Assembly: GCA_964019335.1 (NCBI GenBank)
Contig: OZ025743.1
Coordinates: 1-64,000 of the forward strand
Length of the DNA: 64,000 nt
Direction of reading: 5' to 3'
DNA from: Diplonema japonicum
Taxonomy: Eukaryota; Protista; Euglenozoa: Diplonemea
The translations under genes and the position numbers were made by a program. How positions within the stretch are numbered: position 1 is the first letter of the stretch; each line of letters begins with the position of its first letter. Positions 2,490 to 28,491 of this stretch are shown here, piece by piece. The notes under the pieces were generated by a model that saw nothing but the letters and a program-made list of their open reading frames with translations, had not been told where the DNA came from and ran no database searches.

Positions 2490-2562
2490 TGCCACCACCT
2501 GGGATTGAACCAGGGACCTTCAGATCTTCGGTCTGACGCTCTCCCAACTGAGCTAAAGCGGC
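2490..2562 (-). tRNA. tRNA-Phe(GAA), with C33 instead of U33
   Basis: GCCGCTTTAGCTCAGTTGGGAGAGCGTCAGACCGAAGATCTGAAGGTCCCTGGTTCAATCCCAGGTGGTGGCA; 73 nt cloverleaf with A/B boxes and a T-run terminator. Confidence 0.95.
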
Positions 2563-2566
2563 CTAC

Positions 2567-2900
2567 TTTTTTTTTTTTAATAATAATAATAATAAATATT
2601 CCACTACCAGGCGGGAGGATCGAAGGGGAGTAGAGAAAACCATTCAAGGGAAAGGGAAAGGGACATCACTTCAAACCAAGAGAGGTGTTTGAAAGTGATT
2701 CGTGAAAAGCAGTCTCTGTTACTGAGCCATTGGTCGAGGGGTCCTGGTCCGCTGCTCCCTGTAGTAAATTACTTGGACCCCCTCACCACGCTCTTTTCAT
2801 AATAAAATAAAACCGATCCCACCCACCAGGCAGCACCTGGGTCTCGAGGCATTAGCCGCCTCTAGTAACAAGAGACGACCTCCCAGATTTTAAGAACTTT
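2567..2900 (-). mobile_element. SINE-like element S1, (TTA)n/A tail abutting the tRNA-Phe 5' flank
   Basis: Near-identical inverted copy at 26724-27045; ends CCGCCTGGTAGTGGAATATT(TAT)n; non-coding. Confidence 0.85.
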
Positions 2901-3013
2901 GGAGGAGTTTCAATTGTGAAAAATTAACCAGCTGACTGTGAAACTCCACCGTCTGCTGGACTTGTTGGGCTTTCGGGAGCCAATAAATTCAATTCAATTA
3001 AGTTTCGTTCTTC

Positions 3014-7884: not shown

Positions 7885-9267
7885 TCACCTCTTCTTTGAT
7901 TTTCCGCCTTTCCCGGACTTCTTCGCTGTGTCCGGTGTGCTCGGTGTCGGCGATGTCGAGGTGGAGGAGGAGGTTGTCCCCTTCGAACCCTTCGAGCCCC
8001 CTGGTGCGTAGGGCGCTGCCTTCAGCGACACCTTTGCAGAGGCCCATTCCTGGCCCCTGCGCCTTCCTGGTTTTGCTCCGGCGGGAGTGTCTTCCAACTC
8101 CGTTTCCGAGCCCGAGGATGGCTGGTGTTGCTGTGGGGTGTTCGGTTCCAGCTCCGGTCCGATGAATTTGGACGGTGTCGGGGCTGTGGGTGTGGCGGTG
8201 GTTTGGGCCTTTTTGGCCTTTAGGGCCGTTCTTCTGGCGGTGTCCCTCGCGTCCCGCTCCTCCTGCTTGGCCATCATGGCACGCACCCCTTTCTCCAGAG
8301 CCTCCTGTTGACTCCTCAGCTGCTCCATCAGAGCCGGGAGGCTGGTCCTGATCTCTGCCAGACCCTCTCCCTGCTTCCGCAGCTCCTCCCCCTGCACACT
8401 TACCTGTTTCTGCAGGGGTTGGATGCTGGTCTGGACGGCTGCCAGTCCTTCCCCCTGCTTCAGCACCGCCTCCCCTTGCGCACTGACCTGTTTCTGCAGG
8501 GCCGGGTAACTGGACTGTGCTTCTGCCAGAGACGTCCTCTGTCTCTGCAGTTCCTCTCACTGCGCGGTGATCTCCTGTCTCTGCGCCGAGAGTTCGGCCC
8601 TCTGCGCCGCAACTTCTTGATGCAGATTCTGCATCTGGGCTACCATATCTGGCGAGATTGTTGCCTGTTGTTGCTGTTGTTGGGGGGGCTCCTGTGTGTT
8701 TTTTTGGGGTGTGGCGGTCCTCTTCCTCCACTCTTCTACTGCCTTGCAGTAGAGCTGCCACCCTACCGACCGGCCGTAGAATTCCAGAAATTCTTCTGGG
8801 CTGTACCTGTCTTGGTGGACTTTTGTTCTTTTTTTTTTTTCTTCCCCCTTCCTCGACCACTTCTTCCCTCCTGCAGCCCTGGACTCCAGGGGGTCGGCCA
8901 CCTTTATCGCCGGCAGGACTTCTGCCGTGGCGCCGTTCACCTTGATGCAGGTGTGGTGGGGGGGGGTGCGTGCGGTGTAGAGGAGGAAGGACGCGCCTTC
9001 CGTCGTCAGGATGACGACCTTCTCGGTCTGCTCTGAGACCGTTGCTGCGAGAATCGCAGCTGCGCCCTTCTCCTCCACTCCCTTCGGCAGCGGACCGATG
9101 ATCCAGTTGCCCTTCCGCACCTCGTCCTTTTTCTCCTTCTTCTTCTCTTCTTCTTCTTCGAATACCAGATTTAACTCTGGCATCGCCGCGGCGTCTTCGT
9201 CCACCTGCATCTGCAGGCTGTCCAGTGGGGGCCTCGTGGAGGCGTCCGCGCTGGTCTGCTGATCCAT
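7885..9267 (-). pseudogene. ORF1-like coiled-coil protein with one in-frame TGA (8557-8559)
   Basis: ORFs 8557-9267 and 7885-8466 are in the same frame. The TGA sits where repeats read QGE. Heptad-like repeats, basic C-terminus, directly upstream of family A pol. Confidence 0.55.
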
Positions 9268-9322: not shown

Positions 9323-9352
<30 letters not shown>

Positions 9353-11518
9353 CAAAATACCAATGCAGGGCCGCCATGGAGAGCAACACCTGAGAAAAGG
9401 GAAAAAAAAAGGTGAAGGGAAACCATGGGGAAATAGGGAGGGCAATGGACCAGGCTTCTGCAAGCAGGAGGAGCCCTGGTCCCCCACCAACCCGTGCTCT
9501 GCTTTGGGACAGCCGAAGAGGGCTGAATTACATTATTCCCTCAGTCAAGTGAGAGAAAAACGGGGGCCTACCTTCCAGCTGGATGTCCTTCTTTGGCTGG
9601 AACCTCCGGCGGAAAGCCCCCCAGGGAGGTATTGCTCCTATTGAGCGAATCATTGGTGAGTGTGAAAATAAAAAAAAGGGGAAATGGGAAACAGTGAGAG
9701 GAAGGGAAAGGAAAGTGGAAAACACAACATTCCATTTAACACACACACACGGGGCGATCCCTTAGCGCAGCACGGGGGCCGCGGGACCGGCGTCAAGAGA
9801 GACCGGAGGAGGGGGCGGCACGTTTGAAGGTGCAGTGACGTCTGTAGACGCCAGGGATGATGGCGAGGTGAACAGTCCGGAGCGTGACCAGGCGAGCAGG
9901 CCAGACTCAACAATGAGGTCGTAGATCTGGGTCACGCGTCTCGACAGGGAGAAGGCTAGGGAGGGAGTACCAGCAGGAGTGTCGATCGCCCCCTTCCCGA
10001 TCACAGGGCACCCACCGACAACATGCTCCCTGGACATCGGTGCTGCGTGGCAGGCTGGGCACCGGAGCACACCCTTGTGCTTCCTGTTCGGGCCAGCAGT
10101 CTGCAGGAAGCCGAAGAAGAGAGCCGAGTGACCAATCCGCAGCCGCGAGATGACCGTTTCAGCTTGTCTGGGGAAGCCAAGGGGGAAGTGCGCGGACCGA
10201 AGCTCGGTCGCCACCGCGTAGTTGTGGGCGAGGGATGTTATGAGCTCCGCGGACCTCCGCACCACCCACCGTCGCACCAGGGCCCTCACTGATCGGTAGT
10301 CAAGGGAGGGCCTGTCCTGCTTCCGCTTCGTTCCCTCCACGGCCAGAGCGTCAGCCTTCTCGTTCCCGTCCACCCCACAGTGGGAGGGCACAAACTGGAG
10401 GACCACCGGTGTCCCCTGCGTGCGCGCCGCGGACACCAGCCGGCTCCACGTCTGGTGGTCGAGCTTCTCCCTCTGTCGCGTTGGGCCAGCTCGCAGCTGC
10501 TCGACGAGGGAGAGGGAGTCGGTGCAGATCGACAGCGGGGACTTCGCCAGCGAAGGGTGTGTTTTTCGGAGGGTAGCCACCATATCCAGCGCCGTTTTCA
10601 CAGCCATGCCCTCTGCCCGAAAAGATGAACAGAAGTCGTTGACGCCATGGCACACAGACACAGGGGTCAGGGGGGGAGGCAGCTGCAGATAAACCCCAGA
10701 GCCACCTTTCGCCTTCTGTCCGACCTGTACAACCGAGCCATCCGTGTAGGCATGGATGCCCGGGGGGAGAGCCGCAAGAGCAGCCTCGGCCGCCTTCCGC
10801 CTGTCCGCGTCTGGCGACGATCGCGTGACCCCGCCGGGGAGGTCAGTCCTGAAGTCGACCATGCCTGTCTGCCACGGGGCCGCCAGGGGCGTAGCCGACA
10901 GGTACTCGAAGTGCACCTTTGGTTCCAACCCGCATCGACGCAGTGCTTGGTAGCCAGAGCGCAGCCACCCACACCCCAGCCTGTTCGCCTGCTTCAGCTT
11001 GACCGTCTCCCTGTGAACCGGGGAAGACTGCCAGCAGAAGGCCTTCGCCGTCATCGTCGCCGCAGCACCCTCCGCCATTCTTTCGAGGGGAAGCAGTCCT
11101 GCCTCAGCTAGGAGCTTGTACCCTCCGGAGCCACTCCAGCAGCCCGTGATCAGCACCGCCGCCTCCTGGTGAAGCCCAGCCAGGTCCTTCCTCCCGACAT
11201 CATCGAGCCTGCTGTAGTAGACCCCCATGCAGTAGCGCAGCAGCGGGAGGATGTACGTAACGTAGAGAGACCGCAGAGTGTCCCTCTTGCTGCCCCAGGA
11301 CGTGCCGGACAAGAGCTTCAGCACCCTCAGCCTTTTGCTGGCCCGCCGTAGGATGTCCTGTGCGTGTTCACCGAACGTGAGCCCAGAGTCCACCGTAACC
11401 CCAAGGTACCTCGCGTGTTCAGACAGAGGCAGGGGACGGGCCGCAACGTAATCCACGTCGGGCCGTCGCACGGCTGCATGCATGTCCCGCACGCAGCGGA
11501 TCCGCACACCACCCGCCT
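9323..11518 (-). mobile_element. 5'-truncated LINE family B copy
   Basis: Protein identical to the C-terminal part of 22181-26287; same 3' UTR; poly(A) at 9323-9352. Confidence 0.95.
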
Positions 11519-11531
11519 ACTTTTTTTTTTT

Positions 11532-12905
11532 AATAATAATAATAATAAATGTACCACTGTCGTGCGAAGCTAAAGGCTGGGGGGGAGGGATAGGTGCAGG
11601 AGGCCTGAAGGGCCTCCTGCAAGTGAAAGGGGGAACGAGAGGGGTTGACAAATTTTTTGTAAAAGTTTAAAGAAAACCCTCCCACAACTATCCATACGTA
11701 CCGAGGCGGGAGGTGGGCAGGCCCGGGGGCTCCCAGCGTTCGCAACTGTGCCCACCTTCAACGTCCCTCGGCATCTCACCAGCCCGCATCGCACAACAGC
11801 ACCCTTTGGCCGAACCTCCGGGATTTCAAGGGGTGGGGTACCTCGTCAGTGCTCGTAGGCACACCGGCACGGAGGCATCCCCTTCAGCCGGTTTTGTTGG
11901 GCTGTGGAGCCTTTGGAAAATAAAATTGTAAGGAAAACATAACCAGAGAGGAAGAAAGAAGTTGGGGTGCACGACAGGGCAAAAAAAAGGGAAGACATGG
12001 GGGATGAGAGTACTATTACTAAAAAAGTTTAAATCTACTTCTACTTCTTGCCGGCCCGGCACAGCACGCCTCGCACCCAGCAGCACACGCCACGCAGACA
12101 GACCAGCGCACCTCCACCGCCACCAGTTCTCTTCCAGTGTCCCCGTGCACCCCACCGTCGATCCGTTTATCTGTACCCAGTTCGGCTACCGATCTGTCTG
12201 GCCTTCCAGTTGCGACAGGGCGGTCATTGCCTGAAGGGCGCCGGGATCAACACTGTGGCCTCCACTCCGCGCGAGACCGGTCTCAGCCTCACGTCTCTCG
12301 GATGGGGTACGCTGGAACACTGGGCGACGCCGCCGCCCGCATCACACCACAACACAGCGGAACCAGCACAAACAAACCGTACGCCACTCACCAGCGACAC
12401 CAGCCACAACTCACCGCTCCTGTTCATCCCACCGTTGTCCGAGTACCTGTACCCAGTTAGCCTGTGTCCTGACTGGCCTTTCAGTTGGGGCAGGACTGAC
12501 AACGCTACAAGGGCGCCGGGAACAACCTGTGGCCTCCACTGTGCGCGAGATCGGTCTCAGCCTCTCGACGCTGGTGGAATGAACAGGAACGGTGGGTGTC
12601 GCCGCCGCACGCAACCACGCACACGCCGCGCGATGGGAGAGAATGCCTTTTGCTCAGACCGAGTCTGAGTGGTCTTACACCCCCGCTACCGGTGCCCCGA
12701 TAGCGGCTTGTGCCAAACAGACCGTCTTCGTTCCGGCACAGCCCTCCAACCACAGCCCTCCCTGGCCTGCGGTCCCAGGGGCCACCACGAGGAGGACAGC
12801 GCAGGATACTTCACACCATGTTGTTGTTCTTTTTTTTATGTGTACCCCAACCCCCTTTCTTGAGGGGGGGATAAAAAAGAAAAAAAATAATAACGATACT
12901 TTAGT
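11532..12905 (-). mobile_element. ~1.4-kb non-autonomous retroelement S2 with (TTA)n tail and several structured RNA modules
   Basis: 3' end CAGTGGTACATT(TAT)n; bounded by neighbouring element ends; no long ORF. Confidence 0.65.
11712..11911 (-). ncRNA. Double-pseudoknot RNA motif, copy C (unassigned)
   Basis: Same pairing topology as 17249-17432 and 18673-18859, with compensatory changes. Confidence 0.55.
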
Positions 12906-12908
12906 TAC

Positions 12909-13209
12909 TTTTTTTTTTTTTTTTTGCAATAATAACCACTGGGGGGAAACTGGGGGTGGGGGGAGGGGTGTGGGGTGTGTCCAGTCTTTTGTCTGGAGTG
13001 ACCGAGAGGGCCACCACGTGGGCTGAACCTTCCCTTCGGTGCTCCGTTCCCCCTTCCTGGGACAGCCGACCTGGCTGATTACATTCGGGGCGGTCCCCTC
13101 GAGGCTGAACGCAGGGGCGTTCTCTTGCTGCGCCCTGCGCCCTCCCGGCCTTCCCTGTGGCTGCCTCCCGGGAGGTTGTTTCTTGGCCCATTTGCGTGTG
13201 AGTGTGTGT

Positions 13210-13240
<31 letters not shown>

Positions 13241-16095
13241 GGACAAAGGGGTAGGGGGGGGGGGGTCTATAATGGGCTCACGATCACCCTTGTGCTGCGT
13301 CGGCCGGGGGGAAGATCCCACACTCAGACCATGATAAGAGCCCGGAGGCCTCGATGAAGGCGCAGACCTCGGCGGAGTGTTTGGAAAGCAGCGCGCGGAG
13401 CGGCAGCCCAGTGTCGTAGAAGGACTTAGCTGTGGGAGCCAGAGAATGACAGCCCCTCAGCAGGTGATCAGCGTCGAGCGGTGATTGAACGTTGCAGGCG
13501 GGGCAGGTGAGGTGATGACTCCCCTCAGCCCTCAGGGGTCCCTTGAGCTGGAGGTACCCCCTCATCAAAGGCGTGTGTCCGGTCCGGAGCCGAATGATCA
13601 GGACCTCATCCCTCCTACTGAGTGGTGGGAGAGAGAGACATTCGCCACCGGTGACGAGGCGGTGGTGGCCGGGGGAGTCGCTGTTGTATCTCGCACGCGA
13701 CCTTCCTCTCAGCCACGCTTTTATGGCCGCCTTGCTGGAGCGGTAGCTAACCCCGCAAGGCGACTTCGACAGCCCGTCCCTGGCCGCTCCGTCGGCGAGC
13801 TCGTTCCCCGTCACACCGCAGTGGGAGGGGATGTACCAGAAGTGCACATCACCAGAGCGTTTGGCCCTGAGCCAGGAGGCGGCATCCCAGATCCGTCTGT
13901 CCGTGGACTCCCTCTGCTGTCCGGGGCCTCCAGCGAGCCTCCGCAGCATCGTCTGTGAGTCGGTCAGCAGGTAGAGAGGGCGGCCCCTCAGGTTCACGAC
14001 CGTTTTGTACACCTCCGCAGCCTCCTTCAACCCCATCAGGATAGCGGTGCCCTCGGCGCACATGGGTGTGGAGACCATGCCGGCCCCGTGAGAGGTGGTA
14101 AGGGTGAGGTCCATGTCGGGGACTCTGAGGGCAACCCCAGCTCCCCCTCTCCCCCTTATCACCGAGCCGTCCGTGTACACTACCAGAGCGCCGCTTGGGA
14201 TCTCGTCCAGCTTTTCCGCAGCCGCTGCCGCCCTCACATCGTCGGGGAGTGTCCTCCTGGTGTCGGTGGCGTAGGGATCGACGTGGATGCCTTCCGCCCA
14301 GGGGGGGGCTCTCGTATCAGGCCCTAGCGGTAGGGAAGCAACCGCACTCAGCCCAGAACTCCTCGTCGCCTTCAGCGCTCCCAAGGCCCATCCTGCGGTA
14401 GCACCCCTGACCACCCTGTTCACCGGGGTTCCCACCCACCTCAGTGCCCTCTGCAGTAGAATGGCAGAAGCAGCGTCGGCCATCAGGTCGAGCGGGCGCA
14501 AGCGGGCCTCACACAGTACAGCCGAGGTGGAGGTGTTCTTGACGCACCCCGTGATTCGTCGGGCTGCCTCATCGTGCCTCATGCACAGTGCCTTCCTGTC
14601 TTGAGCAGACATTAGTGCGAAGAAGATGCCAATCGAGTAGGTGAACACCGGTAGGACGTAGGCCAGGTACAAGGACCTGAGTGATGCTGCGGAACTGCCC
14701 CAGGACGAGCCGGAGAGGAGCCGCAGTATGCGAATTCGTTTGTCGTATCTCTCGATGATGTCGCGGGCATGGGCACCGAAAGACAAGTCAGCGTCAAGGA
14801 TGACCCCTAGATACTTGGCCCTATCACGCCTCGCGACGGGGACGGCCGTGGAGAATTCATACACCAGCCCTTTGGAGACGAGTGCAGAGACGTCGCGTCG
14901 TGTCGTGGCCGTGCGGTTAACGGACAGGAGCCTCCTCCCGATCAGGTGAGTAGGTCCCCCGGCGATGAGTCGGCCCTTGAGCTCCAGCGGCTGGAATTCG
15001 AAGCCCGGATGCGTCGCCCCGGTCGAGGGGAAGTAGACGTGGAAGTCGTACGGTTCGCATTTGGGGGTGGGGACGTACAGCGTCTTCTCCCTGCTCAACT
15101 GCATCCCCCATCGTGTACACCAGTCTTCGACTGCACCCACCACCGCCGTGGCCCTGGCCTCGAGCTCAGTCCTTGTTGTGGCAGAGACTACTACCGCGAC
15201 GTCGTCCGCGTAGATCGTGGAGAGCCCAGCCAGACCCTCAAGTTCCCTCGCTAGGTCGTCCACGAAGATGGTGAACAGCACTGGACCGAGTACAGAACCT
15301 TGAGGCACGCCACTCTTGATTTTGTAAGGGGTCCCCTTGACACCCCCCACGACTACCCTCGCTGTTCTGGACGTAAGGAAGGAGGAAACCCACCTGGTGT
15401 AGGCCGTAGGGAAGCGCTTCTGAGACATCTTCTGAATGAGTGCCTCGTGGTTGACCCTGTCGAACGCCTTTGAGAAGTCAAAGAGTATGGTGAGGCATGC
15501 CTCCTTAACTTCGGCGTTCCTTTTTATCGTCACATGCTGCACGATGGCGGCAACCTGCTCCTCGGTGGACCTCCCTTTCCTGAAGCCAGCCTGGGCGGGG
15601 TGAAGTCCCTCTACCATCGTTGTCGGGGAGTCAAGTAGATACGTCACGCGGGCCTCGACCATCCTTTCCATGAGCTTGCCGAGGCAGCTCGTCAGGCTGA
15701 TGGGGCGGTAGGACTCAATCTTCGTGGGGTCTTTGCCCGGCTTCGGGATCGGGACGACTAGTGCCAGTTTCCACGTGTCCGGAACTTGCCCGCTCGCCCA
15801 GGAGAGATTGAACAGCTGTAGAACGATTCTCAGGGATTCCCTACCCAGACGCTTCAGCATCACGTTGAAGATTCCATCGTCGCCTGCAGCACTCTTCGTT
15901 CTCGTCCTGAGCAGTTGTCTCAGCAGTTCGTCCATCGTGAAGTAGCCCGTTCCGCCCTCGTAGGGTTCCTGCGTCTGTCCTGTTGCGTCGAGACCAGGGA
16001 CAGTGTCGTCTCCGCAGATCGTCTCGTAGTAGCGTCCGAGACGATCGGCCCTAGCCTTGTTGCCTGTGAGAAGAGCGTCGCCGTGTTGAAGGGCG
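12909..16095 (-). mobile_element. 5'-truncated LINE family C copy (RT-RNaseH-CCHC)
   Basis: Poly(A) at 12909-12925; 3' end CCCCCAGTGGTTATTATTGC(A)n; frame stays open upstream of the annotated Met (..KARADRLG..) to ~16092. Confidence 0.92.
13284..15935 (-). CDS. Family C pol fragment: RT with insertion, RNase H, CCHC
   Basis: YRPISL, QAGFR, GVPQGS, YADD, KYLG, YTDGS, TDSQ, HCG..NELAD, CPAC..HLL.GC. Confidence 0.9.
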   Translation of the reverse strand: MDELLRQLLRTRTKSAAGDDGIFNVMLKRLGRESLRIVLQLFNLSWASGQVPDTWKLALVVPIPKPGKDPTKIESYRPISLTSCLGKLMERMVEARVTYLLDSPTTMVEGLHPAQAGFRKGRSTEEQVAAIVQHVTIKRNAEVKEACLTILFDFSKAFDRVNHEALIQKMSQKRFPTAYTRWVSSFLTSRTARVVVGGVKGTPYKIKSGVPQGSVLGPVLFTIFVDDLARELEGLAGLSTIYADDVAVVVSATTRTELEARATAVVGAVEDWCTRWGMQLSREKTLYVPTPKCEPYDFHVYFPSTGATHPGFEFQPLELKGRLIAGGPTHLIGRRLLSVNRTATTRRDVSALVSKGLVYEFSTAVPVARRDRAKYLGVILDADLSFGAHARDIIERYDKRIRILRLLSGSSWGSSAASLRSLYLAYVLPVFTYSIGIFFALMSAQDRKALCMRHDEAARRITGCVKNTSTSAVLCEARLRPLDLMADAASAILLQRALRWVGTPVNRVVRGATAGWALGALKATRSSGLSAVASLPLGPDTRAPPWAEGIHVDPYATDTRRTLPDDVRAAAAAEKLDEIPSGALVVYTDGSVIRGRGGAGVALRVPDMDLTLTTSHGAGMVSTPMCAEGTAILMGLKEAAEVYKTVVNLRGRPLYLLTDSQTMLRRLAGGPGQQRESTDRRIWDAASWLRAKRSGDVHFWYIPSHCGVTGNELADGAARDGLSKSPCGVSYRSSKAAIKAWLRGRSRARYNSDSPGHHRLVTGGECLSLPPLSRRDEVLIIRLRTGHTPLMRGYLQLKGPLRAEGSHHLTCPACNVQSPLDADHLLRGCHSLAPTAKSFYDTGLPLRALLSKHSAEVCAFIEASGLLSWSECGIFPPADAAQG

Positions 16096-16107
16096 GCCTA
16101 CATTTCC

Positions 16108-16108
<1 letters not shown>

Positions 16109-16144
<36 letters not shown>

Positions 16145-16296
16145 CAAAATACCAATGCAGGGCCATCATCCGGCGTCTGGCCTTCTCTTACCAGTATGCC
16201 CGTCCCCCTTTAAACTTTTAAAATTTTAAAAAATTTTTAAAATTAACATCCTCTTGTTATCGTGTGCCCTGACATTGTAGTCAAAAACGGATGGCC
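16109..16296 (-). mobile_element. Short SINE-like element S3 carrying the family B 3' terminus
   Basis: Ends GGCCCTGCATTGGTATTTTG(A)n exactly like family B but the body is unrelated; 5' edge inferred from a GTAGGCCG target remnant. Confidence 0.6.
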
Positions 16297-16624
16297 CGGC
16301 CTACTCTGAAGTTGCCAAGATGAGTCCTCTCATCTTCGCACGAACGAGTGTGGTACGGCCATCCCCTCCCCCCGCCTGCCGGAGTGCAGCGGGGAGAGCA
16401 AATACTTCCCCTATCATCCCCATGCGCACACGCACGCTCGCTTCCCCTTTTGATTTTGAGAGATTTTACTCTCACCCTTTCATGTTTCGCTCAATGGAGC
16501 AAATCCCTCTCGAGGGGGCGACCGGGGCCAGTTCCGGTCACCAGAGGTCCCAGTTGAGAAAAACTACGAACTGGGGTCAAGGTCCCCGTCCGAGTCACGT
16601 AGGTCTACGCGGCTTGGAATTAAA

Positions 16625-17440
16625 GTAATTCAGCCCTCTTCGGCTGTTCCAAACAGGTGCACGGGTTGGCGGAGTCCACAGCTCCATCTGATTGCAGAAG
16701 AACTGGTCTTCGCCCTCCCTGTAATATTTCCATGCTTCCCTTCACCTTTCCCCTTCCCAGGTTGTTGTGTGGGGTGAGTCGTGTGGTGACGCGGACCCCT
16801 GGCCGAGCAAAACGAGGGGTGCTGGAGCGAAGACGGTCTGTTTGGCACAAGCCGCTATCGGGGCACCGGTAGCGGGGGTGTAAGACCAACAGACTCGTTC
16901 TGAGCGAAGGCATCTCTCGAGGGGAGCGGAGCCGGGGGGGCGTTTTTCGTGCTGATCCGGGTCCTGACCGGCCCTCTACATCAACTATCCCTCTCCCAAC
17001 CCCTACCTTCCTCTCACGAGTTGGCCCTGCCGCTCCATCGCGCTGGTTGCCTGACGCCAGCGCCGACGACGACGACGACGACCGGGGCCCTCGACATGGG
17101 CAACTTAGAAGAGTAGAGTCATCTTTCCCCCCCTTTTTAGTTTCCCTCAAAACCTCACTCGATGTCTCCTGTTCTGCTGCCAGGTCTTTTCTGTTGCTAT
17201 TCCTCTCTCTTCCCCTTTTCTTTTCATTTTATGTTTTAATTATCTAGTGCCCCACCGACCCAACAAATCCAGCAAGGGGACGGTCTCGTGCTGGTTTAAG
17301 CAATGGTCGCCCCGAAATCCTTAAGACGATCCTACCTTTTGAGGCGGATGCGCTGTTGGCGGGGAATGTGCGGAGTTGGCCAAGGACGCCCAGTCAAAGG
17401 AATTTATTAGGGGGCGAGAACCAGACTGGGTGGGCCTTCG
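16625..17440 (+). mobile_element. Old composite non-coding element(s): diverged family B 3'UTR segment, shared hairpin module and pseudoknot motif
   Basis: 16625-16770 resembles 26518-26665; 16812-16918 matches 12637-12739 in reverse complement; boundaries uncertain. Confidence 0.5.
17249..17432 (+). ncRNA. Double-pseudoknot RNA motif, copy A (unassigned)
   Basis: Shares GTCGCCCCGAAATCCTTAAGACGATCC with copy B; covarying stems. Confidence 0.6.
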
Positions 17441-17811
17441 GCGTTCAATAAACAAAAAAACAATAAGGAAAGGGGTAATATTAATAAGGGTGGGAGGGAA
17501 TGAAGAGGGAGAGAAAAAAGAAATGATAAAAGGATCTTGAAGGACAGTGTCCCAGTACTCACCGCTCCTCTCTGTTGGTAATTGGCCACACAGAAGCTTT
17601 TTTTTTAAAGAAAAAAAAAAAGACCAGAAGGAGGGAGTGCTAAACCCCCCCTACCTATGGTGCTGTTTGTTCTCTTCTTGGGCGAAAGGCTCATGATACC
17701 TTCACTTTGATTTTTGATTTCTCGAGCTCTGCTTTTCAACTCAGCTTTGTTGATTTTTTCTTCCTTTCCCCATTTTCCTTTTATCCTTTTCAAACCTTCT
17801 CTGATGCTCCC

Positions 17812-18184
17812 GTAGGAGGGATGAGGTCCTGATCATTCGGCTCCGGACCGGACACACGCCTTTGATGAGGGGGTACCTCCAGCTCAAGGGACCCCTGAGG
17901 GCTGAGGGGAGTCATCACCTCACCTGCCCCGCCTGCAACGTTCAATCACCGCTCGACGCTGATCACCTGCTGAGGGGCTGTCATTCTCTGGCTCCCACAG
18001 CTAAGTCCTTCTACGACACTGGGCTGCCGCTCCGCGCGCTGCTTTCCAAGCACTCCGCCGAGGTCTGCGCCTTCATCGAGGCCTCCGGGCTCTTATCATG
18101 GTCTGAGTGTGGGATCTTCCCCCCGGCCGACGCAGCACAAGGGTGATCGTGAGCCCATTATAGACCCCCCCCCCCTTTGTCCCC

Positions 18185-18215
<31 letters not shown>

Positions 18216-18474
18216 ACTCACACGCAAATGGGCCAAGAAACAACACAGGGAAGGCCGGGGGGGCGCAGGGCGCAGCAAGAGAACGCCCCTGCGTTCAGCC
18301 TCGAGGGGACCGCCCCGAATGTAATCAGCCAGGTCGGCTGTCCCAGGAAGGGGGAACGGAGCACCGAAGGGAAGGTTCAGCCCACGTGGTGGCCCTCTCG
18401 GTTACTCCAGACAAAAGACTGGACACACCCCACACCCCTCCCCCCACCCCCAGTTCCCCCCAGTGGTTATTATT

Positions 18475-18512
<38 letters not shown>
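17812..18512 (+). mobile_element. Heavily 5'-truncated LINE family C copy (~700 bp)
   Basis: Near-identical to the reverse complement of 12909-13618; poly(A) at 18477-18512. Confidence 0.92.
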
Positions 18513-18514
<2 letters not shown>

Positions 18515-19121
18515 ACGAACAATCCTCCCTTCACTCCCCTCCCCTAGTGTATTTTCGTTCCCTGCCAAAAAACCCCTCCCTCCTTTTAAGACGGTACAGT
18601 GTATTGAAAAGAAAAAAAAAAAGAAAAAAAAACTATATAAATAAACAACAGAAAGAAAGAAAAACTATTCAAGCCCCAACGACAAACAAAAACCGGCATG
18701 GGGACGGCTCGGGGCCGGTCGAAGGCAAGAGTCGCCCCGAAATCCTTAAGACGATCCTTCCTATTGAGGGGGATGCGCTACCAGGGGAAAGGAAAAAAGG
18801 TGGCCATGGGCAGGACAGTCGAAGGAATGTACTAGGGGGCCAAGAGGCAGACTGACTGCGCCATAGGCGATACAAAAGGAGAAGATTTTGACCAGGAAAG
18901 AATGGAACAATGGAATATCTGAAAGGAAGTATACACACACTCCCCTTACTGAATACCGTCTTGCTTCACCCTGTGATTTGCCAGGCACAATTATGTCACC
19001 CTGTGCAACACAGACTTTTGATGTTTCAAACCTCCCAATTTTTATGGTTTCAACTTTCTCCGCCCCCTATCCCCCCCGCCTGGTAGTGGAATAATTATTA
19101 TTATTATTATTGCAAAAAAAA
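18513..19121 (+). mobile_element. SINE-like element S4 with (TTA)n-TGC-(A)n tail
   Basis: 3' end CCCGCCTGGTAGTGGAATA(ATT)n shared with S1; contains pseudoknot motif copy B. Confidence 0.7.
18673..18859 (+). ncRNA. Double-pseudoknot RNA motif, copy B (unassigned)
   Basis: Shares the core and covarying stems with copies A and C. Confidence 0.6.
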
Positions 19122-19149
19122 GTGATCAGGAAAAGAAAAGAAAAGAAAA

Positions 19150-22011
19150 ATGGGCAAGAAGAAAGACAAGCACAAGGAGAAGGCAAAGCCGGAAGGGAAC
19201 GGGGCCAGCACGCAGCTGGCGCAGTCCAAGGCCAGGGAGGAGCGGCGGGTGGAGAGGATGCTCCGCAGCGCGGGAGCAGCCGGGGAGCTGGGGCAGCTCC
19301 TGACGCCGGAGCACCGGGAGAAGATGACGGGGGTGGTCACCGTGATTGACCTCCTCACGCCCGACGCCGCCGCCGCTACAGCCGGCCCAGCGACACCTGT
19401 CGCCTCCACCCCGACCGGCTCCGTCAAAAGGCCGGTTTCGCCTGACGCCAGCGTCGCCACCCCGACCTCCAGCAAGAAAGCTAGGAGGAAGGCCGCCAGA
19501 GCCGCGCGCGCTGACGCTGCCGCCGAAGCCGCACACATAGCTGACGCCACACACCCCCTCGAAGCCGCACGCACTGCGGCCGACGTCGAACTCGCGGGAA
19601 TCGCTGCTGATTTGGAAGCTGCACGCGAGTCGGCCGACGTGGTAGCTGCAGAAATAGCAGCTAAGATGAAGGCTGCGCAGGAGGTGGCTGATGCTGCGGT
19701 TGTCAAAATGGCAGCCGAGACGGAAGCTGCACGCGTGGCTGGTGTGGAGGCTGCTCGCAGAGCAGTCGAGGCTGAGGAGAAGGCTCTGCGCGAGCGGTCT
19801 ACTGCACGACTTGCGGCAGAGGAGAAGGAGGCTGCGCGTGCTGCGGCCGAGATGAAAGCAGCCGAGGAGAAGAAGGCTACAGCCGCAGCCGCTGCAGCCG
19901 AGAAGAAGAAAGCCGCAGCCGCCGCCGCCGCCGAGAAGAAAGCAGCAGCCGCCGCCGCCGCCGAGGAGAAGGCCGCCGCCGAGAAGAAAGCAGCAGCCGC
20001 CGCCGCCGCCGCCGAGAGGAAGGCCGCAGCCGACGCCGCCAGGAAGAAAGCTGCAGCCGCCGCCGCCGCCGCCGAGAAGGAGACCGCAGCCGCAGCCGCC
20101 GCCGCCGAGGAGAAGAAGAAGGTCGCAGCCACCGCCGCCGCCGAAAAGGAAGCCGCCGCAGCCGCTGCCAAAAAGGAGGAAGCTTTGAGGTTGGCGGCCG
20201 CCAAGAAGGCAGATGCCCAGAAGGTCGAGGACGAAGCAGTCGCGAACGCTTCCGCCAACGCGTCAACAGACCAAGGCACGCTCCTCCTCAGCTCAGACTC
20301 TGACACCAGCTCTGGCCCTGAGGAGATGGAGGACGACCCTGCCCCTGCCCCTTCCACAACCCCGCGATGGGACCTGGTGCCAGACACACGGGACGCCCCG
20401 ATCTACACCAACGTGTCCCCCCCGACGGAAACATCCCGCGCTGTCATTGCGCTCGACGATCCCTCCGAAATGGGGGTCGTGTGCTCCGCGTTACCTACGG
20501 CATCCATCACCTTTGTCCTTATGACAGAGGTCCCCGGTGTCACCACCCCCAGCGAGATTGTCATGGTCTCTGGGTCGCGCGCAGTGAACAGGAGGGTCCA
20601 CGTCTCCACGTTCGGGCTGGACCCCCCCACCTACACCCCGCCTTCCACCTTCAACAGCGGATCGGAGGTCGTCTACGTCTGTGTCAGTGCAGACAGCCTG
20701 AAGGAGGCGAAGGCCAGGGTCCTGGAGCTCGCCAAGGCTCAGGGCGCGGTGGTGGAGGATCGTGCGGTCTTCCGCCCAAGGAAGTTCGGTGAGGAGGAAC
20801 CGCGGGCGAGGCACTGGACCCACGAGGTGGGACTGCGCCTGCAAGCAGCACACGTCCACGCCGTCCTGCGCCGGTCCGGGGACGGCTGCTTAATGCGGAC
20901 GACGGAGAGACGCGGGGGGTACGCTTATGTACCCATCGTGGCGGAAGGGAGGGCGGATGCCTTTCGGATTGCGGGGACGCTGGGTGGGTTGTCTCTCGGG
21001 GTGGCGCACCGTAAGGGATGGACTGTGCGGTGCCTACCGGAGACGGAACAGCGGCTCCGGGAAACCCTCGCAAAACTGCGTACAAAGCGCAAGTTTTTGC
21101 TCACCGGGGCCCCGCCGTCCATCACCAGGGCGGCCTTCGACGAAGTGATGGACCACATCGGTTGGAAACCATCCTCCGTCCTGCGACGCACGCAGACGAT
21201 GTTCCAGGGCACGAGGCAACTCGTGTTCTTCATCGTCGTCGACAGCCCGCCCCCGAAGTCCAGGACGTGGCTCCTTGGGGGGCGCCTTGTCTGCCTCCGT
21301 GATGCGGACGACCACCCGACCGTCAAGCCGCCCCCTCTCATCAACAGGACGACACCTGCATCTGCACCTGCGCTTGCAACGTCCTCGACCCCGGCACCCA
21401 CATCTTCTCATGTACCTGCACCTGCGCCTACACCTGTACCTGACCCGGCACCTGTATCGGCGTCTACACCCTCGGGGACTGGCCCTGCGGTGAAAGCAAC
21501 TGGGCTTCCTCCCACCAGCCCGTGGGCGTCCATACCGAGCTCGGTGGCTCCCCCCCAGCTCGACACTGTGACGTCCCCTACACCGCCCCGCAACGTGTCT
21601 GCGGGAAACAAGGAGGGGGTCCCTTCCGGGTCGCCTGAGGTCGCCGCTCTCACTGAGCTCGTCGCCACGCTGAAGGAGTCGATCGTCGGGCTGCAGAGGA
21701 CGATCGACTCTCAGCAGGAGATGATCTCCGATCTGCGGACGACGCTCCGCCTCCTCCTGCCGCAGGCGGCCACGCTGACGACGGGAACGGCAGTGCCGCG
21801 GGACCCTACACCGGGGGCGACGACGACACACGACAGTGTCTGGAAAGGGAAGGGGAAGGGGAAGAAGGGGGCTCCTCCTCTCGCTACGACCTCTGAGGCT
21901 GCGGTGACGAACCTGGGTACGAGGGGGCGGGCCAGGTCGTTCGCGGAGACCAAAGATCTCTTCACCAATGGGGTCAAGGGGCGCTCTGCCTCCATGGGTC
22001 CATCCAATTGA
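19150..22011 (+). CDS. Family B ORF1 protein (basic N-terminus, Ala/Glu/Lys coiled coil, central globular region, Pro-rich linker, C-terminal coiled coil)
   Basis: 953-aa ORF directly upstream of pol; AAAAEKK repeats. Confidence 0.8.
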   Translation: MGKKKDKHKEKAKPEGNGASTQLAQSKAREERRVERMLRSAGAAGELGQLLTPEHREKMTGVVTVIDLLTPDAAAATAGPATPVASTPTGSVKRPVSPDASVATPTSSKKARRKAARAARADAAAEAAHIADATHPLEAARTAADVELAGIAADLEAARESADVVAAEIAAKMKAAQEVADAAVVKMAAETEAARVAGVEAARRAVEAEEKALRERSTARLAAEEKEAARAAAEMKAAEEKKATAAAAAAEKKKAAAAAAAEKKAAAAAAAEEKAAAEKKAAAAAAAAERKAAADAARKKAAAAAAAAEKETAAAAAAAEEKKKVAATAAAEKEAAAAAAKKEEALRLAAAKKADAQKVEDEAVANASANASTDQGTLLLSSDSDTSSGPEEMEDDPAPAPSTTPRWDLVPDTRDAPIYTNVSPPTETSRAVIALDDPSEMGVVCSALPTASITFVLMTEVPGVTTPSEIVMVSGSRAVNRRVHVSTFGLDPPTYTPPSTFNSGSEVVYVCVSADSLKEAKARVLELAKAQGAVVEDRAVFRPRKFGEEEPRARHWTHEVGLRLQAAHVHAVLRRSGDGCLMRTTERRGGYAYVPIVAEGRADAFRIAGTLGGLSLGVAHRKGWTVRCLPETEQRLRETLAKLRTKRKFLLTGAPPSITRAAFDEVMDHIGWKPSSVLRRTQTMFQGTRQLVFFIVVDSPPPKSRTWLLGGRLVCLRDADDHPTVKPPPLINRTTPASAPALATSSTPAPTSSHVPAPAPTPVPDPAPVSASTPSGTGPAVKATGLPPTSPWASIPSSVAPPQLDTVTSPTPPRNVSAGNKEGVPSGSPEVAALTELVATLKESIVGLQRTIDSQQEMISDLRTTLRLLLPQAATLTTGTAVPRDPTPGATTTHDSVWKGKGKGKKGAPPLATTSEAAVTNLGTRGRARSFAETKDLFTNGVKGRSASMGPSN

Positions 22012-22152
22012 AGGGGCCCCGCAGAACAGGGGGGGCAGCAGATCTACGACCATGCTCCCTCTCCTAGTCTCCCTCGCATCCTCCCCAGGAGACTCCTACC
22101 TCTCTGTTTCTTCACCGACTTTTCTGCACTGATCCCCACCCTACTCGGGAGG

Positions 22153-25100: not shown

Positions 25101-26287
25101 AAGCACTGCGTCGATGCGGGTTGGAACCAAAGGTGCACTTCGAGTACCTGTCGGCTACGCCCCTGGCGGCCCCGTGGCAGACAGGCATGGTCGACTTCAG
25201 GACTGACCTCCCCGGCGGGGTCACGCGATCGTCGCCAGACGCGGACAGGCGGAAGGCGGCCGAGGCTGCTCTTGCGGCTCTCCCCCCGGGCATCCATGCC
25301 TACACGGATGGCTCGGTTGTACAGGTCGGACAGAAGGCGAAAGGTGGCTCTGGGGTTTATCTGCAGCTGCCTCCCCCCCTGACCCCTGTGTCTGTGTGCC
25401 ATGGCGTCAACGACTTCTGTTCATCTTTTCGGGCAGAGGGCATGGCTGTGAAAACGGCGCTGGATATGGTGGCTACCCTCCGAAAAACACACCCTTCGCT
25501 GGCGAAGTCCCCGCTGTCGATCTGCACCGACTCCCTCTCCCTCGTCGAGCAGCTGCGAGCTGGCCCAACGCGACAGAGGGAGAAGCTCGACCACCAGACG
25601 TGGAGCCGGCTGGTGTCCGCGGCGCGCACGCAGGGGACACCGGTGGTCCTCCAGTTTGTGCCCTCCCACTGTGGGGTGGACGGGAACGAGAAGGCTGACG
25701 CTCTGGCCGTGGAGGGAACGAAGCGGAAGCAGGACAGGCCCTCCCTTGACTACCGATCAGTGAGGGCCCTGGTGCGACGGTGGGTGGTGCGGAGGTCCGC
25801 GGAGCTCATAACATCCCTCGCCCACAACTACGCGGTGGCGACCGAGCTTCGGTCCGCGCACTTCCCCCTTGGCTTCCCCAGACAAGCTGAAACGGTCATC
25901 TCGCGGCTGCGGATTGGTCACTCGGCTCTCTTCTTCGGCTTCCTGCAGACTGCTGGCCCGAACAGGAAGCACAAGGGTGTGCTCCGGTGCCCAGCCTGCC
26001 ACGCAGCACCGATGTCCAGGGAGCATGTTGTCGGTGGGTGCCCTGTGATCGGGAAGGGGGCGATCGACACTCCTGCTGGTACTCCCTCCCTAGCCTTCTC
26101 CCTGTCGAGACGCGTGACCCAGATCTACGACCTCATTGTTGAGTCTGGCCTGCTCGCCTGGTCACGCTCCGGACTGTTCACCTCGCCATCATCCCTGGCG
26201 TCTACAGACGTCACTGCACCTTCAAACGTGCCGCCCCCTCCTCCGGTCTCTCTTGACGCCGGTCCCGCGGCCCCCGTGCTGCGCTAA
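22153..26287 (+). CDS. Family B pol: 2A-like peptide, APE, RT with insertion, RNase H, CCHC; frame-disrupted near 22248
   Basis: GLVETNPGP in the ORF1 frame (ATG 22153). IQETH, GDFNAHH, SDH, YADD, YTDGS and CPAC..HVV..C lie in the 22181-26287 frame. Confidence 0.88.
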
Positions 26288-26723: not shown

Positions 26724-27045
26724 GTTCTTAAAGTTCTTAAAGTCTGGGAGGTCGTCTCTTGTTACTAGAGGCGGCTAATGCCTCGAGACCCAGGTGCTGC
26801 CTGGTGGGTGGGATCGGTTTTATTTTATTATGAAAAGAGCGTGGTGAGGGGGTCCAAGTAATTTACAACAGGGAGCAGCGGACCAGGACCCCTCGACCAA
26901 TGGCTCAGTAACAGAGACTGCTTTTCACGAATCACTTTCAAACACCTCTCTTGGTTTGAAGTGATGTCCCATTCCCTTTGGTTTTCTCTACTCCCCTTCG
27001 ATCCTCCCGCCTGGTAGTGGAATATTTATTATTATTATTATTATT
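26724..27045 (+). mobile_element. SINE-like element S1, second copy
   Basis: Near-identical to the reverse complement of 2579-2900; duplicated AAAGTTCTT at the 5' end. Confidence 0.88.
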
Positions 27046-27060
27046 AAAAAAACAAAAAAG

Positions 27061-28482: not shown

Positions 28483-28491
28483 CAAAAAAGT

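What the first reader, a model, noticed from the sequence alone, without database searches (positions are those of the whole stretch)
11712..18859. Unassigned ~190-nt double-pseudoknot RNA conserved by covariation in three non-autonomous elements
Three copies lie in element-sense orientation: 17249-17432(+), 18673-18859(+) and 11712-11911(-). Shared features: (1) an enclosing stem, GCCCC/GGGGC in A and B, GGCTCC-CAGC/GCTGGGAGCC in C; (2) an ACAAA linker; (3) a hairpin CCAGC/GCTGG versus CCGGC/GCCGG, whose loop GGGG-A-YG pairs downstream with CR-CCCC keeping a bulged A (CG:CG in A and B, TG:CA in C); (4) invariant GAAATCC; (5) a second pseudoknot crossing the enclosing stem (CGCCCAGTC/GACTGGGTG; CAGTC/GACTG; GGTGGGCA/TGCCCACC). 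By eye it does not fit HDV, hammerhead, twister, pistol or GIR1. Inference: possibly a new ribozyme, a nuclease-resistant RNA or a LINE-protein recruitment structure.
Basis: partly seen in the sequence, partly recalled or inferred. Interest (0 to 1): 0.82.

Follow-up and report, generated by a model that had tools for sequence, protein, structure and literature searches.

The report
Pseudoknotted RNA module in LINE tails
A folded, knotted stretch of RNA, kept intact by matching base changes, sits in the untranslated tail of a jumping gene (LINE) and of its short hitch-hikers in a marine protist, and is probably the handle by which the element's copying enzyme picks out its RNA.

Summary
The module is far more widespread. 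I found roughly 140-150 copies in this 62.5-Mb genome, in seven sequence lineages (A, A2, B, C, C2, Y, Z). A fourth full copy lies in this window at 2724-2981(-).

C2 is the 3'UTR of an autonomous LINE with endonuclease, RT and RNase H domains. The other lineages are ORF-less elements with the same AGUGG..(AUU)n(A)n 3' end, stacked a few bases upstream of tRNA genes.

The fold has four parts:
- a 5' strand pairing with the apical loop of a long 3' hairpin;
- a conserved CCCAACAA linker;
- an H-type pseudoknot;
- a purine-rich hinge.

Lineage-specific complementarity supports it. Cognate strands beat all but 1 of the other 5039 strand permutations for the pseudoknot, and the same for the long hairpin. 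The enclosing stem is weaker.

Rfam gives no match, and the topology is not HDV-like. The most likely role, by inference only, is a protein-recognition handle for target-primed reverse transcription, like the R2 3'UTR pseudoknot. It is larger than that one and lies 110-415 nt from the 3' end.

This scan had already noted the same module on other DNA of this genome (s1-858164, s1-865604, s1-869298).

The parts
17248..17442 (+). Module copy A. Stem 1: 17248-17253 with 17411-17416. H1: 17269-17274 with 17289-17294. PK1: 17276-17285 with 17305-17313. Hinge: 17314-17320. Hairpin Hx: 17327-17352. Long hairpin h3+h2: 17379-17395 with 17424-17442.
   Evidence: Sequence read. Helices. Pair counts. R1 score 248 bits.
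18673..18868 (+). Module copy B. Stem 1: 18673-18677 with 18836-18840. H1: 18692-18697 with 18714-18719. PK1: 18700-18710 with 18729-18738. Hinge: 18739-18745. Long hairpin: 18803-18820 with 18850-18868.
   Evidence: R1 score 229 bits.
11698..11911 (-). Module copy C. Stem 1: 11901-11911 with 11728-11737. H1: 11887-11892 with 11863-11868. PK1: 11872-11882 with 11835-11844. An extra hairpin H2 lies in loop 3. Long hairpin: 11749-11775 with 11698-11719.
   Evidence: R1 aligns PK1 the same way (17.1 bits, E 0.0076).
2724..2981 (-). Stem 1: 2975-2980 with 2754-2759. H1: 2955-2959 with 2928-2932. PK1: 2939-2950 with 2901-2912. Long hairpin: 2775-2793 with 2724-2744.
16762..17812 (+). Non-autonomous element A, cut at its 3' end in this copy. 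The other seven A copies run about 45 nt further into the AGUGG..(AUU)n tail.
   Evidence: Variable 5' starts and a common 3' end across 8 copies. The largest sense-strand ORF is 66 aa.
18477..19121 (+). Non-autonomous element B. It starts next to the poly(A) of the preceding LINE-B fragment.
   Evidence: Ten copies share 18477/18553-19111/19121, and only the window copy has LINE-B sequence upstream. 3' end read.
11525..12857 (-). Non-autonomous element C.
   Evidence: Fifteen copies; 5' ends vary and the 3' end is common at about 11525. 3' end read.
2570..3010 (-). Non-autonomous element Y, about 436 nt. It ends 4 nt before the tRNA at 2490-2562(-).
   Evidence: All 40 of the 104 candidates that were scored are 97-100% identical.
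26730..27052 (+). 5'-truncated Y copy. It begins at the hinge and lacks stem 1, H1 and PK1.
   Evidence: An R1 partial match to the long hairpin lies at 26842-26899.
12909..16100 (-). 5'-truncated LINE-B (RT, RNase H, C-terminal Cys/His region). It shares the 3'-terminal signature. R1 detects no module in it.
17812..18512 (+). LINE-B fragment: ORF C-terminus, 3'UTR and poly(A).

Best explanation
The module is a conserved, pseudoknotted cis-acting RNA domain in the 3' region of a group of tRNA-gene-targeting LINEs. These LINEs carry AP-endonuclease, RT and RNase H domains. The host is a diplonemid-like protist. ORF-less elements that borrow the LINE machinery also carry the module.

Shown here:
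- its presence in the 3'UTR of an autonomous LINE and in six ORF-less lineages;
- the sense-strand fold (H-type pseudoknot, plus a long 3' hairpin whose apical loop pairs with the module's 5' end);
- covariation that maintains the fold.

Inferred only: the fold and its conserved unpaired stretches (the CCCAACAA linker and the purine-rich hinge) form the surface that the LINE-encoded reverse transcriptase or ORF1 protein binds. That binding would select the RNA and assemble the particle that starts target-primed reverse transcription at the AGUGG..(AUU)n(A)n 3' end. ORF-less elements would then be mobilised in trans because they present the same handle.
For: 1. Context.
- C2 copies are the 3'UTR of a 5.5-kb element. 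Two copies are 99.0% identical over 5466 nt.
- Its ORF2 is 1442 aa with Exo_endo_phos, RVT_1 and RNase_H domains.
- The module starts about 240 nt after the stop codon and ends about 160 nt before the tail.
- 24 of 36 genomic matches span the junction of ORF2 end, internal poly(A) and module leader.

2. Retention.
- Apart from one 5' segment shared by A and C (110 nt, 91%), elements A, B and C share only the module and the last 20-36 nt. None shares more than the last 18-29 nt with LINE-B or LINE-C.
- Y is little more than a 35-nt leader, the module and a 150-nt tail.

3. Orientation and mobility.
- 5' ends vary while 3' ends are common.
- Copies within a lineage are 97-100% identical.

4. Structure.
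- 90.6% of cells paired against 50% or less in slid controls; 8 pairs changed on both sides against 0-2.
- swap test, PK1 and the long hairpin each 2 of 5040, all helices 1 of 5040.
- after the bulge, 5 of 6 PK1 positions show two or more Watson-Crick pair types across lineages. Y and Z differ by three double changes in an 11-bp helix.
- 28 G.U pairs. The sense strand is 26 kcal/mol (PK1) and 18 kcal/mol (long hairpin) more stable than the antisense strand.

5. Precedent. A-clade R2 proteins bind a 3'UTR pseudoknot-hinge-stem, and compensatory mutations restore insertion (passages of PMC11601368 and PMC12222951).
Against: - No binding or function data exist, so the mechanism is inference.
- The module ends 110-415 nt from the 3' end. 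The R2 element abuts the priming site.
- LINE-B carries the same 3'-terminal signature, yet neither BLAST nor model R1 detects a module in it. Look-alike arrangements in LINE-B, C and D are by eye and RNAduplex only, and the LINE-C/LINE-D swap did not discriminate.
- Nested minimum-free-energy folds are no more stable than shuffles (z +0.52 for A, -1.50 for Y).
- The enclosing stem is the weakest helix: only 4+5 weak pairs in Z, better on the antisense strand, and in C, C2, Y and Z a local GGCU/AGCC hairpin competes with it (read directly from the sequences).
- Some copies break pairs. Y2 changed both sides of one PK1 pair to G.A. L123 has a U.C. L003 and L007 have an A.C. L007, L066 and L124 have 2-4 nt deletions.
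- The seven lineages are not independent samples; C and C2 are close.
- In A, A2 and B, loop 1 of the pseudoknot is only 1-2 nt against a 9-10 bp second stem, which may be sterically tight. I did not model this.
Confidence: 0.55

Rival explanations
1. The module is a new self-cleaving ribozyme that processes element transcripts.
For: It has a compact pseudoknotted core with conserved unpaired stretches. Retrotransposons elsewhere do carry HDV-like and twister ribozymes (abstracts listed). One B copy and one Y copy start at the hinge, directly after PK1.
Against: Rfam gives no match at E up to 10 on 11000-19500, or at E up to 1 on the Y, Z and LINE-E copies. The strand order of the helices is not that of HDV-type ribozymes. 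The module is internal or in a 3'UTR, so cleavage there would separate the ORFs or the 5' part from the tail needed for priming. Other truncated copies start elsewhere, for example 18703 and 18709. A hammerhead-like CUGANGA..GAAA in C is absent from A and lost in C2.
Confidence: 0.07
2. The module acts on the RNA's fate rather than on RT recognition. It could block exonucleases, promote export or stability, or mark the start of a spliced-leader trans-spliced sub-transcript.
For: The topology, an internal strand pairing across an enclosing stem, recalls exonuclease-resistant RNAs (this comparison is recalled, not tested). In A, C and LINE-E a polypyrimidine tract (0.75-0.82 pyrimidine over 60 nt) ending in AG sits directly 5' of the module. 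Z looks the same by eye. LINE-E has an encoded poly(A) about 160 nt upstream of that tract.
Against: A2, B and Y lack the pyrimidine tract. None of the 15 matches of spliced-leader 3' end plus module start is such a junction. The Y leader resembles the spliced-leader-like 39-mer only weakly (18 of 1000 shuffles score as well). No exonuclease-resistant RNA family matched in Rfam.
Confidence: 0.15
3. The module derives from an unknown host small-RNA gene captured as a SINE body, in the way tRNA-, 7SL- or 5S-derived SINE heads arose.
For: In Y the module begins about 35 nt from the element's 5' end, where SINE heads lie.
Against: Every match I examined lies in a retroelement copy. The module lies in a LINE 3'UTR. 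No Rfam family matches, tRNA, 7SL, 5S, snRNA and RNase P/MRP models included. No run of T follows it.
Confidence: 0.08
4. There is no RNA function. The similarity reflects recent common descent or a DNA-level signal, and the complementarity is incidental.
For: Copies within a lineage are near-identical, so most of the 140-150 copies add no independent evidence. Chance pseudoknot candidates abound in GC-rich UTRs.
Against: Between lineages the paired strands change on both sides while pairing is kept. G.U pairs favour the sense RNA strand. The flanks have diverged beyond BLAST recognition while the module remains alignable.
Confidence: 0.05

Closest known systems
R2 (A-clade) 3'UTR pseudoknot-hinge-stem-loop bound by the R2 protein
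   Same: Both are pseudoknotted RNAs in a LINE 3'UTR followed by a purine-rich single-stranded hinge and a stem. In R2 the RNA is needed to start target-primed reverse transcription, and compensatory mutations restore activity (passages of PMC11601368 and PMC12222951). Here too a pseudoknot, a hinge and a stem are kept by covariation.
   Different: The R2 element is about 65 nt and sits 4 nt from the priming site. It belongs to a restriction-like-endonuclease LINE that targets rDNA. This module is 195-260 nt, has a second long-range pairing, ends 110-415 nt from the 3' end, and belongs to AP-endonuclease/RNase H LINEs that target tRNA genes. No sequence similarity was tested. Binding is untested. 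The supplementary figures of those papers (their Fig. S1a) could not be seen.
LINE/SINE pairs that share a 3' tail (stringent-type recognition), and R2 SIDE elements
   Same: Non-autonomous elements keep the partner LINE's 3' region and are mobilised in trans. The R2 SIDE case rests on the abstract of PMC3414825 seen in the listing. The eel and zebrafish LINE cases are recalled. Here six ORF-less lineages keep the module and the terminal signature.
   Different: In the recalled cases the signal is a short terminal stem-loop. Here it is a large internal pseudoknotted domain plus a separate short terminal motif.
Pr77 / L1TcRz HDV-like ribozyme of trypanosomatid L1Tc/ingi elements
   Same: It is a structured, pseudoknotted RNA shared by autonomous and non-autonomous LINE-type elements of Euglenozoa (abstracts).
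   Different: It lies at the 5' end, is 77 nt long and has the HDV fold and cleavage activity. The module here is 3' or internal, has a different strand topology, and has no Rfam match.
Dictyostelium TRE5-A, a tRNA-gene-targeting LINE
   Same: It is a LINE that inserts in one orientation just upstream of tRNA genes (abstracts of PMC3159450 and PMC5391098 in the listing). That TRE5-A has non-autonomous derivatives is recalled.
   Different: It inserts about 50 bp upstream, against 2-12 nt here. I know of no pseudoknotted 3' module there. The TRE5-A C-module is recalled and was not compared.
Highly conserved central domains of SINE superfamilies
   Same: These are internal domains conserved across otherwise unrelated non-autonomous families, of unknown role (abstract of PMC11481361 in the listing).
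   Different: Those domains are conserved in sequence. Here the fold is conserved through compensatory change, and the domain is also present in an autonomous LINE.

Membership tests
LINE 3'UTR protein-recognition RNA (R2-type pseudoknot-hinge-stem) | Lies in the 3'UTR of an autonomous LINE | tested here: met
   In LINE-E the ORF2 stop is at L125 8803, the module at about 9043-9262 and the element end at about 9424. 24 of 36 matches span the junction.
LINE 3'UTR protein-recognition RNA (R2-type pseudoknot-hinge-stem) | Shared with non-autonomous elements that use the same 3' end | tested here: met
   A, A2, B, C, Y and Z carry the module and the AGUGG..(AUU)n(A)n end.
LINE 3'UTR protein-recognition RNA (R2-type pseudoknot-hinge-stem) | Pseudoknot maintained by compensatory change | tested here: met
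LINE 3'UTR protein-recognition RNA (R2-type pseudoknot-hinge-stem) | Directly adjacent to the priming 3' end | tested here: not met
   The module ends 110-415 nt upstream of the tail.
LINE 3'UTR protein-recognition RNA (R2-type pseudoknot-hinge-stem) | Specific binding by the element's RT, and requirement for target-primed reverse transcription | not testable with these tools
   Needs biochemistry or a retrotransposition assay.
HDV-like ribozyme | Nested double pseudoknot with the strand order P1-P2-P3-P3'-P1'-P4-P4'-P2', cleaving at its own 5' end (definition recalled) | tested here: not met
   The strand order here is stem1, H1, PK1, H1', PK1', centre, h3, h2, stem1', h2', h3'. No Rfam match. 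The module is not at element 5' ends.
Other small self-cleaving ribozymes and GIR1, as held in Rfam 15 | Match to the family covariance model | tested here: not met
   Eight matches at E up to 10 on 11000-19500, all far below gathering score. None is a ribozyme family. No non-tRNA match overlaps the modules of L121, L122, L128 or L125. That these families are in the library is recalled.
Telomerase RNA core (enclosing helix, template, pseudoknot) | Single-stranded template complementary to the telomere repeat | tested here: not met
   15 of 20 contig starts carry GGGTTTGC repeats. The CCCAACAA linker matches neither strand of that repeat. The module is a multicopy retroelement part.
SINE head derived from tRNA, 7SL, 5S or snRNA | Match to the parent RNA model | tested here: not met
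   Rfam finds only the tRNA genes next to the elements and a U2 gene, and nothing inside the modules.
Exonuclease-resistant RNA | Halts Xrn1; ring-like fold around the 5' end | not testable with these tools
   No Rfam match. The topology alone is not diagnostic.

The most novel reading that the evidence does not exclude
The module may be more than a passive protein handle. It could be an active RNA device of a new class: a self-cleaving or exonuclease-blocking fold, or the start of a spliced-leader trans-spliced sub-transcript that turns a LINE 3'UTR into an independent, capped retrotransposition template. On that reading Y is a retro-copy of such a leader-plus-module RNA.
Probability: 0.1. 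Interest if true: 0.8.

Novelty: new variant of a known kind. Interest (0 to 1): 0.5.

Why it matters
Structured 3'UTR RNAs that tell a LINE reverse transcriptase which RNA to copy are understood in detail only for R2. There they are now the basis of RNA-templated gene-insertion tools.

This would be a second, larger and differently built example, in an endonuclease/RNase H-type LINE that homes to the 'safe' sites in front of tRNA genes. Seven natural variants already display which pairs may change and which unpaired bases may not.

That gives a ready-made mutational map for binding and retrotransposition experiments in diplonemids. It also gives a candidate new Rfam family.

It also explains why several unrelated short elements in this genome share one internal block.

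Tried and rejected
1. Telomerase-RNA idea. The arrangement of enclosing helix, single-stranded C/A-rich stretch and pseudoknot looked like a telomerase core. The contig-end repeat (GGGTTTGC, 15 of 20 contig starts) does not match the linker, so I rejected it. A literature search for that repeat found nothing relevant.

2. 'Y-short subfamily starting at the hinge'. This was an artefact. My BLAST database held only the truncated window copy, so all hits appeared to start at 26730. The loci concerned have the full 5' part.

3. Hammerhead-like CUGANGA..GAAA in C. It is absent from A and mutated in C2.

4. Spliced leader joined to the module. 0 of 15 pattern matches is such a junction. The Y leader is only weakly similar to the leader-like 39-mer.

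5. Sequence alignment across lineages. MAFFT misaligns the 3' strand of PK1 and the centre, and puts Z one column out of register with Y. The CM-derived alignment A4 is fragmentary for C, Y and Z. The tool count therefore covers only A, A2 and B. The seven-lineage test is my own RNAduplex swap test.

6. Relatives elsewhere. One metagenome pattern scan gave 20 loci. None scored below E 0.01 with R1; the best was E 0.25. The closest proteins to the LINE-B ORF are transcriptome ORFs at 41-46% identity whose DNA I could not fetch.

7. Exhaustive pseudoknot enumeration in the LINE-B, C and D 3'UTRs gave hundreds of chance candidates and is uninformative on its own.

8. Literature searches (with passages) found no description of this module or of tRNA-targeting LINEs in diplonemids. 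The D. japonicum genome note has no occurrence of 'transpos'.
Full report
OBSERVATION. I read the three stretches. A plain MAFFT alignment of the three gives 62% mean column identity. A and B align throughout, while C aligns only in the 5' third. Rfam at gathering thresholds finds only a U2 snRNA (154-345, minus) and two tRNAs (2490-2562 minus, 28492-28564 plus) in the window. With permissive thresholds on 11000-19500 it lists 8 matches, all far below gathering score. The best is 26.7 bits against a gathering score of 55. One, mir-6794 at E 5.9, overlaps copy C on the opposite strand. None is a ribozyme family.

COPIES AND LINEAGES. Searches of the whole assembly (62,535,345 bases, 132 contigs) gave these results:
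- The A query found 25 matches: 8 A at 96-100%, 2 A2 at 81%, 11 full and 3 partial B at 74-76%, and 1 fragment.
- The B query found 23 matches: 11 full B at 98-100%, 3 partial, 7 A-type and 2 fragments.
- The C query found 41 matches: 15 C at 97-100%, 1 partial, 24 C2 at 78-79% and 1 partial.
- A motif pattern for the first hairpin and its loop matched 68 times, against 2 for the reversed control.
- A looser pattern matched 115 times against 11, and exposed a sixth lineage, Y.
- For Y, all 40 scored candidates of 104 are 97-100% identical, and its hinge 24-mer occurs 60 times.
- A genome-wide search with covariance model R1 found 30 matches at E up to 1 among 150 scored candidates and exposed a seventh lineage, Z. 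Z has 20 exact copies of its loop 20-mer.
- Decayed single copies also exist: L079, L121 (Y2) and L127.

The total is roughly 140-150 copies. One full Y copy (2724-2981, minus) and one 5'-truncated Y copy (26730-27052) lie in this window.

WHAT THE ELEMENTS ARE. Copies of one lineage share a fixed 3' end and differ at the 5' end. For A the starts are at 16762 in three copies and at 16874, 16907, 17094 and 17182 in the others. This is the signature of LINE-type reverse transcription, and it fixes the sense strand. Intact copies end in a short C-rich stretch, then AGUGG, a few bases, (AUU)n and (A)n. The window's A copy is cut at 17812, before that tail. LINE-B has the same terminal signature. 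A (about 1.1 kb), B (about 0.6 kb), C (1.33 kb) and Y (0.44 kb) have no long sense ORF. Z is at least 1.29 kb, and its upstream limit is hidden by a withheld stretch. BLAST finds nothing in common among A, B and C beyond the module, the last 20-36 nt and one further 5' segment shared by A and C. With LINE-B and LINE-C the elements share only the last 18-29 nt. The elements lie head to tail, pointing at tRNA genes. Y ends 4 nt before the tRNA at 2562. A LINE-C fragment ends 2 nt before the tRNA at 28492. An A copy ends 7 nt before a tRNA, and a Z copy about 12 nt before one.

AN AUTONOMOUS CARRIER. C2 copies extend far upstream. Two loci share 5466 nt at 99.0%. They hold a 406-aa ORF and a 1442-aa ORF2 with Exo_endo_phos, RVT_1 and RNase_H domains. 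That ORF2 is 31% identical to the LINE-B ORF over 890 aa. After the ORF2 stop come 45 nt, an encoded poly(A) of about 35 nt, a pyrimidine-rich leader of about 150 nt, the module, and 160 nt of tail. Of 36 genomic matches to the stretch from the ORF2 end to the leader:
- 24 span it whole;
- 1 copy is split by an insertion (2 matches);
- 5 start in the poly(A);
- 5 are small fragments.

The module therefore travels as part of this LINE, which I call LINE-E. The nearest database proteins to the LINE-B ORF are transcriptome ORFs at 41-46% identity.

THE FOLD. From stem enumeration and RNAduplex on homologous windows, the parts in 5'-to-3' order are:
- Stem 1, 5' strand (5-10 nt).
- A linker holding CCCAACAA, or ACAAACAAAAA in B.
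- Hairpin H1, 5-7 bp.
- PK1. The H1 loop pairs with a strand 9-27 nt downstream, giving 9-14 bp. It has a bulged A in A, A2, B, C and C2, a U.U mismatch in Y, and is continuous in Z.
- A purine-rich hinge: GAAAUCC in A, A2, B and C, with related variants in C2, Y and Z.
- A variable centre: two hairpins in A, A2 and B, larger in Y and Z. C and C2 also carry a hairpin inside loop 3 that a 9-nt insertion in C2 lengthens.
- A 15-21 bp interrupted hairpin (h3+h2). Its 28-39 nt apical loop carries the 3' strand of stem 1.

TESTS OF THE FOLD.
- On the 19-sequence A/A2/B alignment, 90.6% of 833 cells are standard pairs, against 33.4-49.5% when partners are slid by 1-3 columns. Eight of 44 pairs change on both sides, against 0-2. 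PK1 and hairpin Hx are 100% paired.
- Model R1 was built only from that alignment with PK1, Hx and h3+h2 as its structure. It aligns C's PK1 to the strand ending in the first CCCC run.
- In the swap test over seven lineages I summed RNAduplex energies of each 5' window with each 3' window and permuted the partners. Permutations as good as the true assignment: PK1 2 of 5040, h3+h2 2 of 5040 (the other one is the C/C2 swap), stem 1 78 of 5040, H1 241 of 5040, all helices together 1 of 5040. Total energy was -479 kcal/mol against a permutation mean of -359, sd 27.
- Anchored on the bulge, 5 of the 6 following PK1 positions show two or more Watson-Crick pair types among lineages. Y and Z, whose 5' strands align without gaps, differ by three double changes (A-U to G-C, and U-A to C-G twice).
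- Among 293 pairs, 28 are G.U. The sense strand beats the antisense strand for PK1 (-122.6 against -96.4) and h3+h2 (-191.8 against -174.0), but not for stem 1 (-93.2 against -102.5).

EVIDENCE AGAINST THE FOLD.
- Nested minimum-free-energy folds are not unusually stable (z +0.52 for A, -1.50 for Y), though they recover H1 and the long hairpin.
- Stem 1 is weak in Z and competes with a local hairpin in C, C2, Y and Z.
- Single copies carry disruptive changes. Y2 has both sides of one pair changed to G.A. L123 has a U.C. L003 and L007 have an A.C. L007, L066 and L124 have short deletions.
- Other within-lineage changes keep or improve pairs. In L004 a G.U became A-U. In L005, L006 and L008 a G.U became G-C. 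In L065 two changes create a U-A and a G.U.
- The seven lineages are few and not independent.

KNOWN FAMILIES. No Rfam family matches any lineage. The strand order of the helices differs from the HDV-type order (recalled definition), and the module is not at element 5' ends. The telomerase-core idea fails on the template test. See the membership table.

FUNCTION.
Shown: a sense-strand RNA fold under selection in the master copies of a LINE and of six ORF-less lineages. It lies in the 3' region, upstream of a short terminal signature.
Inferred: it is the recognition or assembly handle for LINE proteins. The argument has three legs.
- What the hitch-hikers keep is what they need in trans.
- Conserved unpaired stretches flanking covarying helices are typical protein contact sites.
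- A-clade R2 proteins read a 3'UTR pseudoknot, a GGAAAAG hinge and a stem, and compensatory mutations restore insertion (passages read).

Three points weaken the inference: the module's distance from the 3' end, the lack of a detectable module in LINE-B, and the absence of any experiment. By eye and by RNAduplex, the 3'UTRs of LINE-B, LINE-C and LINE-D show the same order of parts: a 5' strand complementary to the loop of a long hairpin, a C/A-rich linker, and a hairpin whose loop pairs downstream. One U-A/A-U exchange separates LINE-C and LINE-D in the stem-1 analogue. However, the LINE-C/LINE-D swap does not discriminate, and chance candidates are many. I treat this as a lead.

EARLIER NOTES AND LITERATURE. 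After forming this reading (stated), I found that the scan had already described the same module on other DNA of this genome: s1-858164, s1-865604 and s1-869298. It had also described the tRNA-targeting LINE stacks and named the organism Diplonema japonicum. The published genome note gives 62.30 Mb, compatible with this assembly, and contains no occurrence of 'transpos' (abstract and passages). The D. papillatum genome paper lists LINE-type ORFs only in general terms (passages). My searches found no description of this RNA.

LIMITS. Supplementary figures of the R2 papers were not seen. No pseudoknot-aware aligner or R-scape was available.

Noticed in passing
G000 contigs C1-C20, first 240 nt (L081-L100): 15 of 20 contig starts begin with tandem GGGTTTGC repeats (a 9-mer variant on C2). 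The G-rich strand is at the 5' end of the contig, opposite to the usual telomere orientation.
   Followed up: partly
window 17187-17248 (+), 11912-11973 (-); L125 8850-9042: In A, C and LINE-E a 60-nt tract of 75-82% pyrimidine ending in AG lies directly 5' of the module, and Z looks the same by eye. It resembles a spliced-leader acceptor site. LINE-E also has an encoded poly(A) of about 35 nt, 45 nt after the ORF2 stop. Five 5'-truncated copies start in that poly(A).
   Followed up: partly
window 1355-1375 (+) and 228 places in G000: A spliced-leader-like 19-mer ending in TTTATTG occurs 228 times in the genome. It is followed by GT-type sequence, many copies near contig ends, or by varied sequence. 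The window holds a variant at 1355-1375.
   Followed up: partly
window 16814-16918 (+) and 12637-12746 (-): Elements A and C share a second segment near their 5' ends (91% identity over 110 nt). By eye it contains a 10-bp hairpin.
   Followed up: no
window 12419-12613 and 12142-12341 (-): Element C holds an internal direct repeat of about 195 nt at 76% identity.
   Followed up: no
window 9323-28489: Two opposed head-to-tail stacks of LINEs and hitch-hikers. The plus-strand stack ends 2 nt before the tRNA at 28492. LINE-C (19130-26723) is full length, with a 953-aa alanine-rich ORF1. The A copy is joined at 17812 to a 5'-truncated LINE-B, which looks like a template switch or a deletion.
   Followed up: partly
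window 18147-18484; 26286-26705; 16164-16767: The 3'UTRs of LINE-B, LINE-C and LINE-D share an AAUGUAAU..CAGCC..GGCUG hinge-plus-hairpin block. They also show candidate pseudoknots arranged like the module.
   Followed up: partly
window 154-345 (-): A canonical U2 snRNA gene (141.5 bits).
   Followed up: no
L129 about 404-605: A withheld stretch (reads N) hides the upstream limit of element Z.
   Followed up: no
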